A stretch of 60,255 nt of DNA, the filler included, from Sluysia triapertura (lineage: Eukaryota), in assembly GCA_046118255.1 (NCBI GenBank). It is 4 parts of 4 records of this genome, joined end to end, with 100 filler letters (N's around TTAATTAATTAA, not from the genome) between each part and the next. Parts side by side here need not be neighbours in the genome. Positions count along the whole stretch, not along the records: positions 11,531 to 22,650 come from JBJNIA010188621.1; 3 more parts are not named here. The stretch is one strand, 5' to 3'. This document shows, piece by piece, positions 11,595-22,501 of the stretch. The notes beneath the pieces were generated by a model that saw only the letters and a program-made list of their open reading frames with translations, was not told the DNA's origin and ran no database searches. The stretch's first letter is position 1; the number at the start of each line of letters is the position of its first letter. A program made the position numbers and the translations under genes.

Positions 11595-12473
11595 TATTAT
11601 GTTGAGAAGGATGAAATTTATAGTTAATTGGTAGTAATAATAATTTTACCGTTCTGTTTTTCATTGTAAGCTGTAAAAAATACTAAAATCGTTTTTTAAA
11701 AATTAATCTTGTTGAAAATGGAACGGTCAGAAATTTGTACTATTATGAAGCATAAATTCTTACGTGGGTCTTCGGAATTACAGACCGCGTGGAGCTTTAA
11801 TATCAAATTGGTTCGCCAAATTTTGCACAGGTAACTTTGACCTTACGAATAAGCCATACGTCGTCGACCAGAATCAAAGGTCACCTGATGATCTCAGAGT
11901 ACATATAAATTATTGTTGAAGTTTGGTGTTAGCGATTAAACAATATTAACTCATTTATCTCAAATCGGTAAAGTACAATTGGGTTCCACATGAACTTAAT
12001 GAAAAACAGAAATAAGAGTGTTTGGAAGATTACTTGATGTTGCTTTCTTGTTGCAAATATTATCCATTTTTGAATTGAGAAATGGATCCAATATGACATT
12101 AGCAAACATTCGGCCGAGTAGTAGAATAAAGATGAATAACCAAAACATACTCCAAAGTGCAATATTAATCAAAAAGTTGATGGTAAATGATTTCATGAAA
12201 TCTGGCTCATTTATTGTACAAAATGATACAAAAATCTACTTTATGATACCACTAGACCAAACGACTAGTGTAACTGGAGGAATTGGAGTTTTAACTTATC
12301 TATTATCCTCCACACTCACTAGAGCTAGTCACTCCTGACTACCACTTCCGCAAGTTGGACAACGTGTTAATATGAAAACAATTTAATTCTGACAATGGCG
12401 TAAAACTGCCCTTCCAGGAATTCAATTCACGAATAAAACAATTCCTTATATGTGTAAGTTATCAACCAACCTT
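11595..12473 (+). mobile_element. Degenerate mariner transposon
   Basis: Frameshifted transposase: N-terminus MERSEICTIMKHKFLRG (from ~11718), the WVPHEL motif (~11981) and PPHSLELVTPDYHL (decayed YSPDLAPSDYHLF, ~12307). TIR-like ends TATTATGTTGAG... and ...CAACCAACCTTA. Confidence 0.85.
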
Positions 12474-13720: not shown

Positions 13721-14510
13721 CACTCAAAATATTAATATTTTTAAATGATATTTTTAAATTTCACATTTCTCTCGATCACTAAAATTTTCTCTTAAAACAA
13801 CTATTCTTTTCTAACGTAAAGTCACATTTATTATTAAAACAATAAGTTATTTCTTGAAAACAACGTAACATTTAAAATTAATTTTATTAAATTAACAAAT
13901 ATAGAGTAAAATAGTATAAAAACATTTTAAGATGTCATAAAAATATGAAGATAACGTAGGAAAATAAAAGATTTTTGAAAATTCAAAATAAGATAATATA
14001 GTTTATGTATAACGTTGCAAATCGTGGATTTTCAAAACATTATATTTAGGTATACATTAAATTAATTAATTTAGAAAATTAATTTAATTAATTGACATTA
14101 GCAAATGAAAATAATAAACACACAAACTTCGTCAAAACCAAAAAAAACTTATTGATTAAAATGATATATTATGTGGTTATAAAATGAAAATATTTATCTA
14201 CAATAATTAATTTATCAATTTATTTTTCAATATTCAAAATACGAACAAATATACTCGTTTAGAGTTGTCATTTTGGATGAAGTTTAGAATGCTTTTAAAG
14301 CTTTTTATTCTTTACAATCGTTACAGGTAAAAGATATAGCACTACTTTATTTCTTGGATAAGGCATTATTTTGTACAAAAAGGTGATGCAAAATATAGAA
14401 AGAATCAAAAATGCATAAAACGAGTACTGCTAGGTTCTATTGAATTTAACTCAAGTTTAACTCATTCTCTCAAAACACAAAATTTATTTAAACTAATAAA
14501 TTCAGTTATT

Positions 14511-14906
14511 TTAATATTTATATCCTAGTTTACATGTTTTCGATATACTTTTCCATCCTGCCTTGATTTTTACTTGAAATGTAGATAATTTGGGATATGA
14601 TGTATTCGGTACGAAGTTCAAATAATCAGATGATATCAGTTTTTCACTACCTGACAAAGTTAATTTCTTAGTTTTCACTTTACATGATGCTTCAAGACAT
14701 AGTTCAGCTCTAATATTGATATCACTTGGTATCAAACCCTTATTTTCAATACTGTATTCGATTTTCGTCTTGATTTCCTCTGGATATCGAACAATTTGGT
14801 CACAATTTAATATATTTATATCGAATTGTTTAACAGTAACACAAGCCAAACAGTTTTCTGTCAATATTGATGATAGTATAAGTAAAATTAAAATCGTATA
14901 CTTCAT
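14511..14906 (-). CDS. Small secreted Cys-containing beta-rich protein, cluster paralogue 1 (131 aa, family not recognised)
   Basis: Intronless ATG-TAA ORF with a hydrophobic signal peptide ending CLA|C. Clear paralogy with 15578-15964 and 22097-22501. TATATAA ~40 nt upstream, AATAAA ~25 nt downstream. Confidence 0.88.
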   Translation of the reverse strand: MKYTILILLILSSILTENCLACVTVKQFDINILNCDQIVRYPEEIKTKIEYSIENKGLIPSDINIRAELCLEASCKVKTKKLTLSGSEKLISSDYLNFVPNTSYPKLSTFQVKIKAGWKSISKTCKLGYKY

Positions 14907-14942
14907 ATTTATAATTTCTTTATACGATTAACTGGTACTTGC

Positions 14943-14980
14943 TTATATAACAAGTGCTTTTCTGATTAACTTCAAACTTT
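14943..14980 (-). promoter_or_regulatory. TATA box plus shared upstream motif (AAAGTTTGAAGT) of paralogue 1
   Basis: Similar motif at similar spacing from a TATA-like box in all three paralogues (also 16013-16049 and 22532-22566). Confidence 0.45.
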
Positions 14981-15577
14981 GTTATTTCTATCTATATTGA
15001 TAATGCATTATCTCTTCTTGCTTTATTATGCGTTTCGAAAAAACAAACTAATACTAATGTCGATTTTAAAAAAACAATGTTAAAAAAACAAAAGTGGCGC
15101 CAATTTTTTGAAATAGTAAATTAAAATGAGGTAAAGAGCATTCATAGCTGATTTATTTTCATATAATAGATTCGTAAAAGAAAATTAAATAAGAATAGAG
15201 TTAGACTTTTTTTGAAGATATTATATAAAATTTTCTATGTTTTATTAGTAAAAGTATTCAATGATTTATTTGATTTGGGAAGTGCTGGGATTTATTTTGT
15301 ATACTATTTTATGTAATATTTGGTACAGTTTATAGAGTCATATATCAAATAATCCTTCTACTGTGAAATTATTGAATTAAATCGGGGTTTTCTGGGTGTA
15401 ATAAAATCTGTTAATATATTATCCATGTAAAATGGCCATCTGTTTAAGTTAATCAATTTTGATTGGTCCCTGTAGTCGTCATTTATTTACTATTCAATTA
15501 TTTATGTTATTTATCAGTTCAAGTAATAAATTTTATGATAAAACAAATAACATAGAATTATAGATATATATATATTT

Positions 15578-15964
15578 TTATCTAATATATCCTACATTAC
15601 AAGATTGTTTTTCCAAGCTTGGTCCAGCTGTTACTTGTACCTGAAATTGTGTATCTAATGGATAAGATTCATTAGGTTGAAAATCAAAATATCTGACAAC
15701 ATACGATAATGCAGGTTCTTTACTAGTATAAGAAACCGAGATGGCTTTAGTTATACAAGTCGTATTTAAACACATTCGAACTTCAAGAGGAACATTGTTC
15801 ATTTCTAAAATTGCTTTAGATTCAATTTTTGTACGTACTTTATTTGGATATCGAATCGTTTCATTACAATTTATAATAATTATATCGAAATAACTTTGGC
15901 AAGCTCTAATATCATCTAGTAAATTAGTTATTAGTAATATTAGAATCAATGTACTATGGTTCAT
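15578..15964 (-). CDS. Small secreted Cys-containing beta-rich protein, cluster paralogue 2 (128 aa)
   Basis: Intronless ORF with signal peptide ending IRA|C. Shares FD...NC, RYP...TKIE, CxxxxC, FxFxP..Y, FQVxV.AG and CxxGY with the other paralogues. Confidence 0.88.
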   Translation of the reverse strand: MNHSTLILILLITNLLDDIRACQSYFDIIIINCNETIRYPNKVRTKIESKAILEMNNVPLEVRMCLNTTCITKAISVSYTSKEPALSYVVRYFDFQPNESYPLDTQFQVQVTAGPSLEKQSCNVGYIR

Positions 15965-16279
15965 ACGTTTAAGAAATTTTTTATTCTATATTAATCTATT
16001 TCAACGGAAACCTATTTATGTAACTTAAATGTTTTATACTTTGAACTTTGAATTAAATATTTTTATTAAAGACGAAAAATACAAAATACTATCATTTTTT
16101 TCTTTATTTCTTGTATATGATTATAAAAAAATTAAAATTTTACAAAAAGTATAATTTCAAAAATATCTTAAAATAAAATAAGAAAATATTCTAATAAATG
16201 TAAAATGGCATTTCCTTTATGTAATAAAATGTCTTAAAATATCTTGTAATAAAAAAGTAAACGAAAGAAGATAAAAATA

Positions 16280-17170
16280 GAGTAAACTCCCGATTATTCG
16301 GGCTAATGATGGTGAGGGTCGACACAGATAATCCGCTAAATAATAATGATAATAATAAAAATACTTTAAGTGCTTTATTAAAAAATCGGTAATTTTGGTT
16401 TGTTTAAGTGAATTTCTCAACAACTTTTTAATACTATCTCGAATTTTTCTTAAAGATTCGTTATAGTTGAAGTTCTGTTGATCGACATAAGTCAATGGCG
16501 TGTCTTGACTAATGTGATTGGTAATATCTTCTACTTCACTTTCTGTCTCACTTTCATTTTCATTTGGATTTGAAACTAGATTTGAAATAATATCCGTGAA
16601 ACTCTGTATCTGGAATCTTGGATCATATGAATTAAATTCCATCAATTTCTCAGTATTTTGGTCATCAACATTTTCAAAGCCATTTAAATGTTACACATCT
16701 CAAGTTCGATGAAATCCGACAAAATTTTCAACCAAGCTTAATTTTGTTCCAAGATTTAACAGCTCCATATGTTGCATCTAACATTGCCATGTTTTTCCAT
16801 AAATTTATTAAATCGTCATTCTCGCTACAAAAGCTTCTAAGGAGATCATTGCGATAATGGCGTTTCATTAAAGAGATAACTCCTTGATGTTACATTAGGT
16901 GGTAAAAATTTTGCAGCTGAAGGCCGTCGTTTGTTTTCAGTATGCTTTCATTTGGATGATACGAATCATTATCTAATAACAGTACTGCCCTCTGGTAATC
17001 CTTTACTTTTTAGAAACTCGAATTTCTGGGACCCATTTATTTTTAAACAAATGTTCAAAGATCATTCTTCCTTTTTGATTGTAGTAGTCAACAGGATGAT
17101 TCTTTATTTCAGTTCCTTTAAATGATCCTGTCTTTTTTACTTTTCCAATCACGAGAAGCTTCATCAATAG
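16280..17170 (-). mobile_element. Tigger/pogo (jerky-like) DDE transposon remnant
   Basis: Minus strand encodes AAKFLPPNVTS...QGVISLMKRHYRNDLL (DDE_1 family motif, with a small deletion) and the C-terminal KQTKITDFL typical of Tiggers. TIR-like GAGTAAACTCCCGATTATTCG at ~16280. Confidence 0.85.
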
Positions 17171-17559
17171 GAAAACAACTTATTGACTCAAAATGATATA
17201 TCATGTGATTATAAAATTAAAATATTTATCTACAATAATTAATTTATCAATTTATTTTGCAATATTCGATATAAGAACAAAAGTGCTACAAAAAAAACAC
17301 ATCCAGTAAATACGGCAATGTCGGTAAAAAAAGTGATGGTGAATAAGAAGAGAATAAGAACTTACACTTGGAGAATGAAGTTTGAAAATAGGAAAACTCG
17401 AGAGATTAATATAAATTAAAGAATATGAATGATAATCACAAATTCTCCCAAATCATGTGTAAATTATTGTTGATAATTAAACAACTTATAGGATATACTA
17501 TTCGCATTACTTTTTACTATTATCATTTTTATTGTTTGTTATTATATAATTATTATTAA

Positions 17560-17980
17560 TAGACTTGATTTTCGAATACTTATTTTATGCATGACTTGAA
17601 TTTTGTTTGCTTTTGGCAATTTTAGAGCACTCCTCGATCATTAAGATACTGCAATAACAGTTCGATACCATCGAAACGACAAATTGATAATAGCCGGCTT
17701 CTTTTGGCTTTTGTCACAATTTCATCATTTTTTAAAATGATATCGACTTGTCTAACCAGCGTTAAATAATGACTTTACGTAATGATCGATCAACACCAAG
17801 TCATTTGCAATTTTCTAAACTGACAATCATTACTTGTTGTATCCCGATCTTTTCCAACATACTTTGATAATTTTCACCATCTTGGATTCTTTGAATAATT
17901 CTAATAGTTTAATTTCTAATTCTTGACACTGTACAATCGACGCTCGCAGTAACAAAATATCATTCAATGGATCATACCTA
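17560..17980 (-). mobile_element. piggyBac transposase C-terminal remnant
   Basis: Minus strand reads RFDGIELL...NCQKQTKFKSCIK, resembling the PGBD C-terminal RFDG...C..C.K.TKF.C Cys-rich tail. Broken by stops. Confidence 0.5.
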
Positions 17981-18091
17981 ATTAGCATAGTTAGCACAAA
18001 GCGTTACTTCATATTAAAAAGATTACGAAATATTAACTTTTTAAAACAATAAAAAAATTGATAGTTAAAAAAGTAAGAAACTATTACTTTT

Positions 18092-18206
18092 TCAGTGCAT
18101 TTTACATATGTTATCAATGAAATTTAAATTAGCAACTGTTGTAAACAATTCAAACTTCATTTGTTTACAATTTGTAACATCGTAACTGATTGTATATATC
18201 AGTTCA
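18092..18206 (-). CDS. Possible C-terminal part of a fourth secreted-family paralogue, cut by the gap
   Basis: ...KFELFTTVANLNFIDNICKMH* has an F...CK ending with spacing close to FQVKIKAGWKSISKTCK. It is on the same strand, and its downstream flank (17177-17282) duplicates the downstream flank of paralogue 1 (14145-14249). Confidence 0.35.
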
Positions 18207-20397
18207 NNNNNNNNNNNNNNNNNNNNNNNNNNNNNNNNNNNNNNNNNNNNNNNNNNNNNNNNNNNNNNNNNNNNNNNNNNNNNNNNNNNNNNNNNNNNNN
18301 NNNNNNNNNNNNNNNNNNNNNNNNNNNNNNNNNNNNNNNNNNNNNNNNNNNNNNNNNNNNNNNNNNNNNNNTTAATCTTTAATATAAATAAATAAATAAT
18401 CCTAATTAAGATTATTAAAATTAAAATAACATTGAACCACCATAAATTTTTTTGAAGCCACAATGAATATTATACATTAAATAAATATTAAGCTTAAAAT
18501 AAATATCCTAATTATAAATATTAAATTCGTTTTCAAATGAATGAAAGACAAAATTAATTTGTATACACATATTAATTAAAATTAGGAAATTAAATTTAAA
18601 AATAGATTGATTGGAATATTTGATTTGGTTATTTTTAATCATCGCAACTTTCGACCACAATGTTACAGATTCATATAGAAAACAATACAAATTAAAAGTT
18701 GTAAAAATTATAATTAGATTTAAATATTAAGAATAATTTTCAAATAATTATAAGAATAATTAATAAAATATTAAATTAAAAAATAAAATATTAAATATAT
18801 CTTAATGATTTTACAAAAACTTTAAAAGAAACTTCTTAAAAGGTTCTGAAATCTATAACTGAAAAAAAGAAATAGAAACTTAATGTAAGAAACCTGGACT
18901 CAAATCAATGTAATTTGTAGATAAAGTTTGTAATAGAAGAATTTTAGGATGTAATAAGAAATAAATAGCATGATACTAAAACATATAAAACAATATGCAG
19001 AAGAGTGGAGACGGATGCGCAAAAAATGTAACCTATGAAATTGATTTAAATTGAATATTGTTATGAACTTATCAACTTTTGCGCCACCACACGGTTATAA
19101 TGAGACAATTATCTTATAGATATTTCGCGTATTTTGTAGTTGATATCTTTGAAAAGTAATTCAAATATATTTATTATGCAGAAAAGTTTTGTATTGCTAT
19201 TTTCTTAATTTATGTGGTGAGTCCCTTACAATCTTAGTCTTTCTCACTTAAGAAGTAGTAATTGGAAATAAATTATGATTTTAAATGTTAACTATTTTAT
19301 ACAAAATAAAGTCGATCCTCCCTTAAAATTTAATGGATAAAACAATCGTCTTCTTATAATATTTTGTATTTTATAATACTTTTCTAAACGACTAAATGTC
19401 TTTTTGAAATTATAAAAATAAATGATAGGTTACGTGATATTTTACGACCGTATTATAAAAACGGCACCTTACAAATATCAAACTTTCTTTAATAATAAGT
19501 TTAAGTATAATTTAAGACCGTATCTAAATAACAGAGTATCCTATATTATATAATTTTTCAAGTAAAATAAATAGGGAAAATTTATATATTAAATACAAAC
19601 AACAAAATCTAACAAATAATTAACAATAATAATAAAACATTTATCAGATTATAATATAATCAAATTTAAAGATTTTAGTTTAATTTTTTCTTCTCCAAAA
19701 TTAAAAGGGACGATAAAAATAAAATTAGCGATTTTAAGTTGATTTTGCGCACAATAAAATAGGCGAACTTAATATTAAAAAACTAACGAGTAAAACAAAT
19801 ATATATGTCCTGTAATCAATCAAAATCCAAGTAATTAGAAAATTTTAAGATTGATGTGACAATCGAATTCCAACTGAGAAAAATAAAGAAATCGAAAATT
19901 CTTTAAAATTGATGTGAATCCAAATAATCTAAATAAAGAATAAATAAAAATTTTTAAGATTGTTGTGTGGAGTGAGTGAAGTGTATATATTAATGAAGAT
20001 TTTTCAAACGACCTTGATCAGGCTATTTCAAACAATAAGCTATTTTAAACGAATTATATTATTTTGTAAATTATTCTATTTCATAAATTTAATAATAATA
20101 TACAAGCAAAATTTTATTTGAATATTTTAAAACTTGTATTAAAATATTATTACTTTTTCTATATTAGAAAATATTTATTTAAAACTGTTATTTTTAGAAC
20201 CATATTAAATATTTAATTAATATTTTATGATTTTTTTAGTGTAGAATACAATTTAATTTTATTTTTAGAACTAGAGCATACATGTATACTTTTATTTAGT
20301 CTTATTTTTAGATTTGAACATTGGACATATTAATAAAATTGATGTGTTTCCATAATATTCAGAAATCTTTTTCTGTTACTTACTTTTTATAAGTGGA

Positions 20398-20540
20398 TGT
20401 GGTGACTCACCAATAATTCTGAAATTTTATTAATACAGAACCTTAACAATAATCAAAACCATTAAATGTACCTCATTCACAATCATAAACACAAATATTA
20501 CATAATTTCACATTTTATTGATTTTTTTAAACATATAAGT
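20398..20540 (+). mobile_element. Short or deleted copy of the TGTGGTG-headed repeat family
   Basis: Starts TGTGGTGACTCACC and contains the family block caaaaccattaaatgtac...ttcacattttatt also seen at 3879-3911. Confidence 0.5.
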
Positions 20541-22096
20541 GAATATTTAGTCTAATTTTTATACAAAAAAAGGAAACATAATTATTTGAAATTTATAAAT
20601 TAATGAGATTAATATTATAAAATTACAATAAATAAAAATAAAACTTTAAATAAATCTCAATAATCATAAAATAATTTAATTAAAATATTTCAAAATAAAC
20701 ATCATAAAATCAAAAATAAGCTAAAAAAAGGTAAGACATATAAATCGAAACTTATGAAATTTAATTAGCAAATTAAAAAGATCGCAGTGTTGGAATAAAG
20801 AAATAAAATGGAAATAAAGAAATAAATACTAACAAGCACAAACTAACACATGATACAAATTGGTATTGACAATTCATTAAAATATTTGGCTATTCATAAA
20901 ATAATTAATTCATTATTGGATTATACGTTGAATTATTAATTTGATTTCATTTTAATTAATTGTTGTTTTACCTTGACATTTATTTATATTTTTATTTGTG
21001 AATATATTTATGAATCACATTGATAATAACTATTTCTTGAATTATAAAATCAAGTATTAGTACAAATTAATAAAACTTTGACATAAATTAATATTTATAT
21101 TATTAAAATTTATTTTAATTAGTTACGTTTGGCCTCTTCATTAATTAATTCGAATTTTATTTATGTGGTGTTTTGTTATACTCTTGGATGTTTATTTAAT
21201 TAAAACTTATTCTCTATGATTATTTTATTTACTTAAAACTAAGTATTTCTGGAGGCTTAAGTCAATACTCGTCTCTCTTCTTAAAGTGCAAACTAAAATT
21301 TCCTAACTTTTGAATCCTTTTTTTTCAGTTCCAAAAATCAATAAAACTTTAACGAAGGTTTGTGTAGAATACAAAAGATTATTAGTTTTTTAAAATGGTA
21401 ACATGTGGCCTAGTCACACTTGCAGTCAATTATAGATAATGTTATTCACTAAAAATCAATTTTAATGTCCGATGGCTGTCTTTTTAGTAAATATTATAAT
21501 AAGTGTCAAATAACAAAATTATTCCTATTTAAATATTATATCTCATTAAAAATTATACATCTTGATGGCAGAAATATAACTTTTAATTGTTAATTAAATG
21601 TCTTTAATAGCAGAAATAAGTTTAAATATTCACAAATTAATGGAAACCCTTTTTATAGCAATTTTCCAAAATTTTTTTCTGTAATTAATTTCTCTATATA
21701 TTTATTTCGTGCTAACATTACAAATTGTTTTAACATAGATATTTTATTATACATGCAAAATTATTTCAGTAGTACAGTAGTATTTAGTCATAACATGATT
21801 TAAAATAATTTACCAAAGATATTTTTTGTAGAAAGACCTAAGATTTTAGTCAAATCTTTTCTAGCAGAAATAAATGACACTAACTTTCACTTTTAAAATC
21901 ACGTTATTGACTTATAATTTATATTTCGAAAATTAAATTATCATAATTAATATTAATTAAAAGATAATTTAAGGAATAATAAATAAATAAAACTTTTTTA
22001 GTTTATATTTTTATAAAAATAATATGTAGCATTACTAAAGTTGTATCAATATTATTTCGACATGACTATTTTTAACTGATTCTTGTAAAATAATTT

Positions 22097-22501
22097 TTAT
22101 TGATTTTTTGTATATCCAATATTACATGATCTGATTAAAGTTTTTGTTGCTACTTCTACTTTAATTTTAAACAAAGAATGTATTGAATAAAATCTAGGTG
22201 GTTGAAATTCAACAAATTCTAATGTTTGAAATTTTTCTGCACCATACAAAGTAAGTACCTTTGTTGTAGTTTCGCAATAAGTGCCAATACACATTTCTGT
22301 TGCAACATTAACATTTTGTACAGTTAATCCTAAATTGTGAAGTTCATACTCGAGTTTTGTTTGAATAACATTCGGATATTGAACAACTTGATCACAATTC
22401 AGTACAGTGACATCGAACTGTTTTACAAGAACACAAGCTTGACAGTTTTTTATCGACGTTGTAATTAAATATAAAATTAAAATCAATACTTGGCAATTCA
22501 T
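22097..22501 (-). CDS. Small secreted Cys-containing beta-rich protein, cluster paralogue 3 (134 aa from ATG 22501)
   Basis: Intronless, signal peptide ending CQA|C. ACVLVKQFDVTVLNCDQVVQYP closely matches paralogue 1 (ACVTVKQFDINILNCDQIVRYP). TATATAA upstream; AATAAA overlaps the stop. Confidence 0.9.
   Translation of the reverse strand: MNCQVLILILYLITTSIKNCQACVLVKQFDVTVLNCDQVVQYPNVIQTKLEYELHNLGLTVQNVNVATEMCIGTYCETTTKVLTLYGAEKFQTLEFVEFQPPRFYSIHSLFKIKVEVATKTLIRSCNIGYTKNQ

What the first reader, a model, noticed from the sequence alone, without database searches (positions are those of the whole stretch)
14511..22501. Cluster of intronless secreted beta-rich proteins of unrecognised family with a conserved mature N-terminal cysteine
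Seen: three same-strand, intronless 128-134 aa ORFs (14511-14906, 15578-15964, 22097-22501). Each has a signal peptide ending x-x-Ala immediately before Cys, and five conserved mature Cys (N-terminal C; NC; CxxxxC; CxxGY). Shared motifs FD[IV]x[IV][LI]NC, YPxx[IV]xTK[IL]E and FxPxxxY sit in an alternating hydrophobic pattern typical of beta-sandwiches. The copies are well diverged yet all intact in a region full of decayed TEs. Established: an N-terminal Cys exposed by signal cleavage is the palmitoylation site in Hedgehog and Spitz. Inference: four Cys form two disulfides, and the odd N-terminal Cys is lipidated or cross-links oligomers. This would make a lineage-specific family of surface, cuticle or host-interaction (effector) proteins. 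I do not recognise the family.
Basis: partly seen in the sequence, partly recalled or inferred. Interest (0 to 1): 0.8.

Follow-up and report, generated by a model that had tools for sequence, protein, structure and literature searches.

The report
Orphan family of small secreted beta-sandwich proteins
Three neighbouring single-exon genes in a very AT-rich, transposon-littered eukaryotic region encode an unannotated, fast-evolving family of small secreted Ig-like beta-sandwich proteins with no detectable relatives. The family is real, but its function and the proposed lipidation of its first cysteine remain untested.

Summary
Three minus-strand ORFs (14511-14906, 15578-15964, 22097-22501; 131, 128 and 134 aa) are clear paralogues (tblastn E 1e-34 to 1e-15). 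They are the longest ORFs in 24%-GC DNA apart from one transposon remnant; about 0.01 ORFs of this length are expected by chance.

The assembly gap (18207-18371) lies between genes 2 and 3 and touches no ORF. It affects only whether gene 3 is truly linked to the other two.

No relative was found in Pfam, NCBIfam, PDB sequences, an exhaustive profile search of 1.84 billion representatives, or three DNA collections. Two independent AlphaFold2 models (pLDDT 75 and 77) give the same 8-strand Ig-like (E-set) sandwich. Structural neighbours form a flat, function-neutral list (Z about 11 down to 8). ML/Npc2 does not stand out.

The first ~30 mature residues are under purifying selection (omega 0.16-0.46 at saturated dS); the rest evolves at omega about 0.5-1.6.

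The idea that the N-terminal Cys is the odd, lipidated or cross-linking residue is neither supported nor refuted. No model coordinates, RNA data or organism identity were available, and the homodimer test gave no verdict. This is a genuine but ordinary lineage-restricted secreted family. Interest is moderate to low.

The parts
14511..14906 (-). g1: complete single-exon CDS, 131 aa plus stop. Signal peptide is residues 1-21; the mature domain is 110 aa starting at Cys22.
   Evidence: ORF; paralogy; alignment; AF2 model pLDDT 75 with 8 strands; identical in the run X1 contig.
15578..15964 (-). g2: complete single-exon CDS, 128 aa plus stop. It is the most divergent copy, with a 2-residue deletion just after the N-terminal Cys and three N-glycosylation sequons.
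22097..22501 (-). g3: complete single-exon CDS, 134 aa plus stop. The mature domain is 112 aa from Cys23. It is separated from g2 by about 6.1 kb that includes the assembly gap.
   Evidence: AF2 model of the mature domain pLDDT 77 with the same 8 strands.
14844..14906 (-). g1 signal peptide (21 codons). The equivalents are 15902-15964 in g2 and 22436-22501 in g3.
   Evidence: Hydropathy and the (-3,-1) rule; modelled as a helix with low pLDDT at the junction.
18207..18371 (.). Assembly gap between g2 and g3. It is not part of any gene of the family.
   Evidence: N run; ORFs across it are artefacts.
16220..18003 (-). Decayed pogo/Tigger-type DNA transposon remnant directly upstream of g2. This is context, not part of the family.
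   Evidence: DDE_1 PF03184 at 33.3 bits (cutoff 22) for 16731-16889, and 18.4 bits for 17006-17179. The 157-codon ORF at 16220-16690 has no homologues.

Best explanation
g1, g2 and g3 are functional paralogous single-exon genes of a previously unannotated, taxonomically restricted family in an AT-rich eukaryote with a genome of several hundred Mb.

Each gene encodes a pre-protein whose signal peptide is most likely cut at a conserved Ala|Cys junction. This releases a soluble domain of about 110 residues that folds as one Ig-like (E-set) beta-sandwich of eight strands.

Inferred steps:
- The CxxxxC pair staples the central beta-hairpin.
- The Cys in the last strand is bonded to one of the two N-terminal Cys (C14 or C1).
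- The remaining Cys is unpaired. It more probably makes an intermolecular disulfide (covalent dimer or tether to a partner) than carries a lipid.
- The conserved first 30 residues (strands A, A' and B) form the constrained core or binding face, while the rest of the surface evolves quickly. That pattern is usual for extracellular binding proteins involved in immunity, host interaction or reproduction.
For: Real genes:
- ORF lengths are far beyond chance, and pairwise homology is E 1e-15 to 1e-34.
- DNA similarity is confined to the CDS; the flanks do not align.
- dS is about 1 (saturated) yet no stop or frameshift has accumulated. Whole-gene omega is 0.47-0.67.
- The N-terminal 32 mature residues have omega 0.16-0.46, against about 0.5-1.6 elsewhere.

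Secreted and soluble: an N-terminal h-region, a shared (-3,-1) site and no other hydrophobic segment.

Fold:
- Two AF2 runs on different paralogues give the same strand order, with pLDDT 75 and 77 and pTM 0.64 and 0.68.
- VIA-align gives Z 11.0-11.3 to transglutaminase/factor XIII barrel-1 and to GH66/GH2 Ig-like domains. For factor XIII the rmsd is 2.2 A over 100 residues.
- Atlas TM scores are 0.63-0.77 to CARDB/DUF11/GH2-type domains.

Orphan status. The proteins themselves are on record nowhere.

Hairpin disulfide: C49 and C54 flank the turn between strands 38-50 and 53-64.

Flexible N-terminal Cys: pLDDT is below 50 for mature residues 1-4, and g2 tolerates a 2-residue deletion right after it.
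Against: - No expression evidence: no RNA run holds the stretch.
- The MSA has only three sequences, so the AF2 models are of moderate confidence and cannot discriminate between sandwich subtypes.
- Cys pairing was not measured.
- Omega near 1 over two thirds of the protein is also compatible with weak constraint. The estimates are noisy, because dS is saturated and codon usage is extremely AT-biased.
- The homodimer prediction scored 0.00, which the tool says to treat as no evidence either way.
- The organism is unknown, so any biological role is a guess.
Confidence: 0.5

Rival explanations
1. The family is an extremely diverged offshoot of the ML (MD-2-related lipid-recognition; Npc2 / Der p 2) domain, a secreted lipid- or sterol-binding sandwich. 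In that case the N-terminal Cys is bonded to the last-strand Cys, as in Der p 2 C8-C119, and C14 is the orphaned one.
For: - Same size class, secretion and single-domain E-set sandwich.
- From my memory of Der p 2 (a lead, not a test): C-x12-C and C-x4-C spacings, a last-strand Cys, and a P...P/YP strand-turn-strand ending with similar spacing to the final Cys.
- Foldseek lists ant NPC2 3wea at rank 27 (E 1.9e-3, TM 0.44) for the g1 model.
- Lipid-binding sandwiches RhoGDI (TM 0.64) and UNC119 lead the Foldseek list for the g3 model.
Against: - No hit to Pfam PF02221 for any copy, even at E up to 10.
- No PDB sequence hit at E up to 10 with the profile.
- No ML protein among the hits of the exhaustive profile search.
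- ML structures are absent from the top 50 in three VIA-align runs (Z cut-offs 8.6, 7.7 and 10.0).
- RhoGDI is not recovered by VIA-align.
- There are five Cys, not six, and the middle of the domain is about 17 residues shorter.
Confidence: 0.15
2. One reading: signal cleavage exposes an unpaired N-terminal Cys that is N-palmitoylated by a Hedgehog acyltransferase-type MBOAT enzyme. This would make a lipid-tethered surface ligand or effector.
For: - The Ala|Cys junction fits the (-3,-1) rule in all three copies.
- The Cys is invariant although it sits at a poorly modelled, indel-tolerant N-terminus.
- The number of mature Cys is odd.
- g1 and g3 have a Lys at +5.
Against: - No similarity to Hedgehog, EGF-type ligands or any known acylated protein.
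- Only a handful of substrates of these enzymes are known (my knowledge).
- An odd N-proximal Cys in secreted proteins more often makes interchain disulfides, as in Alt a 1 or adiponectin (my knowledge).
- The Cys could equally be bonded to C104 or C14.
- It cannot be checked whether the genome has the enzyme.
Confidence: 0.07
3. The ORFs are not host genes with a function. They are cargo or relics of a mobile element, or recently born ORFs drifting neutrally.
For: - They are embedded among decayed pogo/Tigger-type and mariner-like remnants and MITE-like repeats.
- Omega is about 1 over much of the length.
- There is no expression evidence, and they are unannotated everywhere.
Against: - Three copies at dS about 1 all keep 128-134 codons open in DNA where 8.8% of random codons are stops.
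- All five Cys and the strand pattern are kept.
- The N-terminal region has omega 0.16-0.46.
- The flanks share no similarity, so the copies did not spread as one mobile unit.
- The sequence folds confidently enough into a defined domain.
Confidence: 0.06

Closest known systems
Ig-like / E-set accessory sandwiches (transglutaminase and factor XIII beta-barrel 1, GH66 and GH2 Ig-like domains, CARDB, alpha-2-macroglobulin MG domains, HAP2 domain III)
   Same: Same overall 7-8-strand sandwich. Z is 10-11.3; for factor XIII the rmsd is 2.2 A over 100 of about 110 residues. Both independent models agree. Atlas TM scores are 0.63-0.77.
   Different: Sequence identity is 2-14%. Those are domains of large multidomain, mostly bacterial or intracellular enzymes. 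This family is a free-standing secreted domain with its own Cys framework. The list is flat (375 chains with Z of 8 or more), so no specific kinship or function follows.
ML domain proteins (Npc2, Der p 2 / Der f 2, MD-2; Pfam PF02221)
   Same: Small, secreted, single E-set sandwich with a Cys at the start, a short Cys-loop in the middle and a Cys in the last strand. There is a weak Foldseek hit to ant NPC2.
   Different: No HMM or sequence signal. Five Cys rather than six. The domain is shorter. It is not among the best structural neighbours.
Alt a 1 (fungal secreted beta-barrel allergen)
   Same: A functional analogy only, from my knowledge: a small secreted beta protein with five Cys, of which four form two intramolecular disulfides and one N-proximal Cys makes a covalent homodimer.
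   Different: A different fold (11-strand barrel) and a fungal-only family. There is no Pfam AltA1 hit. Dimerisation was not supported or refuted here.
Hedgehog / Spitz N-terminally palmitoylated ligands
   Same: A Cys predicted to become the first residue after signal-peptide cleavage.
   Different: No domain similarity. The fold class is different. Acylation was not tested.

Membership tests
ML domain (PF02221, Npc2 / Der p 2 / MD-2) | Significant match to the family HMM or to solved members by sequence | tested here: not met
   No PF02221 hit at E up to 10 for any copy. The profile against PDB sequences gave 0 hits at E up to 10.
ML domain (PF02221, Npc2 / Der p 2 / MD-2) | Six Cys forming three conserved disulfides (first strand to last strand, an N-terminal loop pair, a central loop pair) | tested here: inconclusive
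   Five invariant Cys. The positions could correspond to five of the six, but pairing could not be measured and the comparison rests on memory.
ML domain (PF02221, Npc2 / Der p 2 / MD-2) | ML structures are the closest structural neighbours | tested here: not met
   3wea is at Foldseek rank 27 with TM 0.44. It is absent from the top 50 in three VIA-align runs.
ML domain (PF02221, Npc2 / Der p 2 / MD-2) | Central hydrophobic lipid-binding cavity | not testable with these tools
   Model coordinates are not returned.
Ig-like / E-set beta-sandwich (fold class, not a family) | Two-sheet sandwich of 7-9 antiparallel strands, with many E-set domains as neighbours | tested here: met
   Eight strands in both models. 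Z reaches 11.3, and rmsd is 2.2-2.6 A over about 100 residues for the best hits.
Hedgehog/Spitz-type N-palmitoylated secreted ligands | Cys as first residue of the mature protein | tested here: inconclusive
   Ala|Cys is the only (-3,-1) site shared by all three. SignalP was not available. g3 also has a plausible upstream site (TTS|IK).
Hedgehog/Spitz-type N-palmitoylated secreted ligands | Hedgehog N-terminal signalling domain or EGF-like ligand domain | tested here: not met
   No Pfam hit. The fold is an Ig-like sandwich.
Hedgehog/Spitz-type N-palmitoylated secreted ligands | Amide-linked palmitate on the N-terminal Cys; HHAT/Rasp enzyme in the genome | not testable with these tools
   This needs mass spectrometry and the whole genome.
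Bacterial lipoproteins (lipobox) | [LVI][ASTVI][GAS]C lipobox in a prokaryotic gene context | tested here: not met
   The residues before the Cys are C-L-A, I-R-A and C-Q-A, so the -3/-2 positions do not fit. ORF density is low and eukaryotic-type transposon remnants are present. There are no prokaryotic relatives.

The most novel reading that the evidence does not exclude
A new, lineage-specific class of secreted single-domain Ig-like proteins whose invariant first residue, a Cys exposed by signal-peptide cleavage, is enzymatically lipidated or used as a reactive thiol to tether the protein covalently to a membrane, cuticle or host target. If lipidated, this would extend Hedgehog/Spitz-type N-terminal Cys chemistry to an unrelated fold.
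Probability: 0.07. Interest if true: 0.75.

Novelty: new variant of a known kind. Interest (0 to 1): 0.3.

Why it matters
This adds one more taxonomically restricted family of small secreted proteins: a new sequence family on a very common fold. Such families are numerous in eukaryotic genomes, and they are often where immunity, reproduction or host-interaction functions evolve.

The contrast between a conserved N-terminal face and a fast-evolving remainder, together with an invariant Cys at the predicted mature N-terminus, gives a concrete and cheap biochemical question: is that Cys free, paired, dimerising or acylated?

Without the organism, expression data or relatives, the finding does not bear on any long-standing problem.

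Tried and rejected
Searches that found nothing:
- Pfam at E up to 10 gave only a chance 12.5-bit tailspike hit. NCBIfam found nothing.
- The word-indexed search of 5.8 billion proteins found nothing with g1 or with the mature-domain profile at E up to 10.
- The exhaustive profile search of 1.84 billion representatives gave one hit at E 8e-4. It is a 1431-aa bacterial repeat adhesin that matches only the F-x-Y-x-P-N-x-x-Y strand motif in six repeats. I rejected it as homology.
- PDB sequences gave nothing.
- ESM Atlas by features gave recognition values of 2040 and 1448, below the 2300 mark, with the best score 0.87 and no usable named hit.
- Back-translated pattern scans of metagenome, viral and prokaryotic genome contigs found no relatives.
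- Exact-protein look-ups for all three proteins found them on record nowhere.
- Rfam and tRNA scans of the piece found nothing.

Tests that gave no answer:
- The homodimer prediction of the mature g3 domain scored 0.00 with no verdict. It is not evidence either way.
- The sequencing-run search found a single DNA run with a coded organism and no RNA, so expression and taxon stay unknown.
- Two literature searches returned nothing specific.

Hypotheses not supported:
- My initial ML/Npc2 hypothesis was not supported by the tests. See the rival explanations.
- The lead that the g3 model's Foldseek list starts with RhoGDI and UNC119 was not reproduced by VIA-align.

Full report
**Observation**

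- g1: 14511-14906, 131 aa
- g2: 15578-15964, 128 aa
- g3: 22097-22501, 134 aa

Each starts at the first ATG after an in-frame stop. At this base composition 8.8% of random codons are stops. A 130-codon open frame therefore has a probability of about 5e-6 per start, and about 0.01 are expected in the whole piece.

The only longer stop-free stretch is 16220-16690 (minus strand). It belongs to a decayed pogo/Tigger-type transposon: DDE_1 scores 33.3 bits (cutoff 22) at 16731-16889 and 18.4 bits at 17006-17179.

The three proteins are clear paralogues. tblastn gives E 1.7e-34 to 2.2e-33 for g1-g3 and E 1e-15 to 1e-19 for pairs involving g2. No further copy or fragment occurs in the piece.

**The assembly gap**

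The N run at 18207-18371 lies between g2 and g3, 2.2 kb and 3.7 kb from them. It touches none of the three genes. The ORFs that the ORF lister reports across it are runs of X.

The membership of g3 in one physical cluster with g1 and g2, and the 6.1-kb distance, therefore rest on the scaffold.

The g1-g2 pair is 672 bp apart. It is covered with 0 differences by a single 2114-nt contig, at depth about 16, assembled from the only public run that holds the stretch. That run is probably the assembly's own source, so this is not independent support. Its contigs total about 735 Mb, which points to a large eukaryotic genome.

**Are they genes?**

Nucleotide similarity between the loci is confined to the coding sequence. 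The best stretch is 75% over 122 nt, starting at the ATG of g1 and g3, and the flanks do not align.

Synonymous divergence is saturated (NG86 dS about 0.95-1.1). Whole-gene omega is 0.47-0.67.

Split by region:
- The first 32 mature residues have omega 0.16-0.46 at dS 0.8-1.55. This is protein-level constraint, not gene conversion.
- The remaining two thirds have omega about 0.5-1.6.

These numbers are noisy: the segments are short, dS is saturated and codon usage is extremely AT-biased. Even so, three copies that old have kept open frames, all Cys and the strand pattern, and that is hard to explain without selection.

TATA-like boxes lie 37-74 nt upstream of the ATGs, and AATAAA lies 23 nt (g1) and 91 nt (g2) after the stops. 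Such motifs are common by chance in DNA this AT-rich.

No RNA run holds the stretch, so expression is untested.

**Secretion and the Ala|Cys junction**

Each protein has an N-terminal hydrophobic core ending at about residue 15-16 and no other hydrophobic segment (the maximum 19-residue hydropathy beyond residue 25 is 0.8 or less).

Candidate cleavage sites allowed by the (-3,-1) rule were listed for each copy. The Ala|Cys position (C-L-A|C, I-R-A|C, C-Q-A|C; c-regions of 5-7 residues) is the only one shared by all three at the same aligned column.

This is a transparent rule-based check, not SignalP. g3 also has an acceptable upstream site (TTS|IK).

An upstream cut would therefore give a CxxC motif and six Cys in those two copies.

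There is no C-terminal hydrophobic tail. N-glycosylation sequons number 1, 3 and 0 in g1, g2 and g3.

**Fold**

Two AlphaFold2 runs gave the same order of eight strands:
- full-length g1: pLDDT 75.3, pTM 0.64
- mature g3: pLDDT 77.0, pTM 0.68

The signal peptide is modelled as a helix. The junction and the first four mature residues have pLDDT below 50.

Structure comparison returns the same flat list for both models.
- Z is 11.0-11.3 for transglutaminase/factor XIII beta-barrel 1 (factor XIII rmsd 2.2 A over 100 residues) and for GH66/GH2 Ig-like domains.
- Next come HAP2 domain III, alpha-2-macroglobulin MG domains, CARDB, arrestin N-lobes and CsgC.
- There is no step in the scores, and 375 of 996 re-aligned chains have Z of 8 or more.
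- Foldseek E-values are all near 1e-3.
- ESM Atlas matches (TM 0.63-0.77) are again CARDB/DUF11/GH2-type domains.

The fold is therefore a common Ig-like (E-set) sandwich, and it carries no functional information.

**No relatives**

All of the following found nothing:
- Pfam (E up to 10) and NCBIfam
- PDB sequences
- the word-indexed search of 5.8 billion clusters
- an exhaustive HMM search of 1.84 billion representatives
- the Atlas feature search
- pattern scans of metagenomic, viral and prokaryotic contigs

The single hit at E 8e-4 is a bacterial repeat adhesin that shares only a strand motif.

The three proteins themselves are on record nowhere. The source genome, and presumably its close relatives, therefore appear to be unannotated in these collections. 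The true taxonomic range of the family remains unknown.

**The cysteines**

C49 and C54 flank the two-residue turn between the strands at 38-50 and 53-64. They sit opposite each other in a hairpin, so a disulfide is very likely. This is an inference.

C104 lies in the last strand. C14 lies between the first two short strands, and C1 is six residues before the first strand.

In the usual Ig-like topology the second short strand (A') pairs with the last strand. Two observations fit a flexible N-terminal tail: pLDDT is low there, and g2 has a two-residue deletion right after C1.

The ML-domain pattern (first Cys bonded to last-strand Cys) is the alternative, and it would leave C14 free.

The tools return no coordinates, so I could not measure distances and the question stays open. 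A homodimer prediction gave no verdict.

**ML/Npc2 hypothesis**

Size, secretion and parts of the Cys framework recalled Der p 2 and Npc2. That resemblance comes from my memory and is only a lead.

The tests did not support membership:
- no PF02221 hit
- no PDB sequence hit
- ant NPC2 only at Foldseek rank 27 with TM 0.44
- no ML chain in the top 50 of three VIA-align runs

RhoGDI and UNC119 lead one Foldseek list but do not lead by VIA-align. I keep this as a rival at about 0.15.

**Verdict**

'Unrecognised secreted beta-rich family' is supported.

'The odd N-terminal Cys is lipidated or cross-links' is untested. As far as lipidation goes it is unlikely. Covalent dimerisation or tethering through whichever Cys is unpaired is the more conventional expectation.

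This is a real but ordinary kind of finding: a lineage-restricted, fast-evolving family of small secreted Ig-like proteins in an unidentified AT-rich eukaryote.

Noticed in passing
window 16220-18003 (minus strand): A decayed pogo/Tigger-type DNA transposon sits directly upstream of g2. DDE_1 fragments lie in different frames: 16731-16889 at 33.3 bits and 17006-17179 at 18.4 bits. An LLLDN-type motif at 16893-17009 was seen by eye. The 157-codon ORF at 16220-16690, with an acidic stretch, is probably the transposase's C-terminal part and has no homologues.
   Followed up: partly
window 11700-12335 (plus strand): ORF fragments that look by eye like the N-terminal helix-turn-helix and following region of a mariner-type transposase, broken by stops and frameshifts. 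Pfam did not confirm them.
   Followed up: partly
window 14058-14249 and 17156-17281: A 126-nt dispersed repeat (83% identity) with 32-nt inverted arms (14058-14089 / 14183-14214 / 17215-17246), which looks MITE-like. The two copies bracket g1, g2 and the pogo remnant.
   Followed up: no
window 15130-15450 and 16090-16200: Other contigs of run X1 match these intergenic stretches in short pieces, and depth rises there (up to 43 against 16). They are therefore dispersed repeats. Short direct repeats (15378-15449 against 16198-16242, 74-76% identity) flank g2.
   Followed up: no
window 18031-21030: G+C is extremely low (12-24%) on both sides of the assembly gap, with no ORF of 60 codons or more apart from artefacts. 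This is probably why the assembly broke here.
   Followed up: no
g1 residues 19-22 and g3 residues 20-23: g1 and g3 have a Cys at -3 of the predicted cleavage site, giving C-x-x-C across the junction (NCLAC, NCQAC). g2 has DIRAC. If cleavage were upstream, these two copies would carry a CxxC motif at the mature N-terminus.
   Followed up: partly
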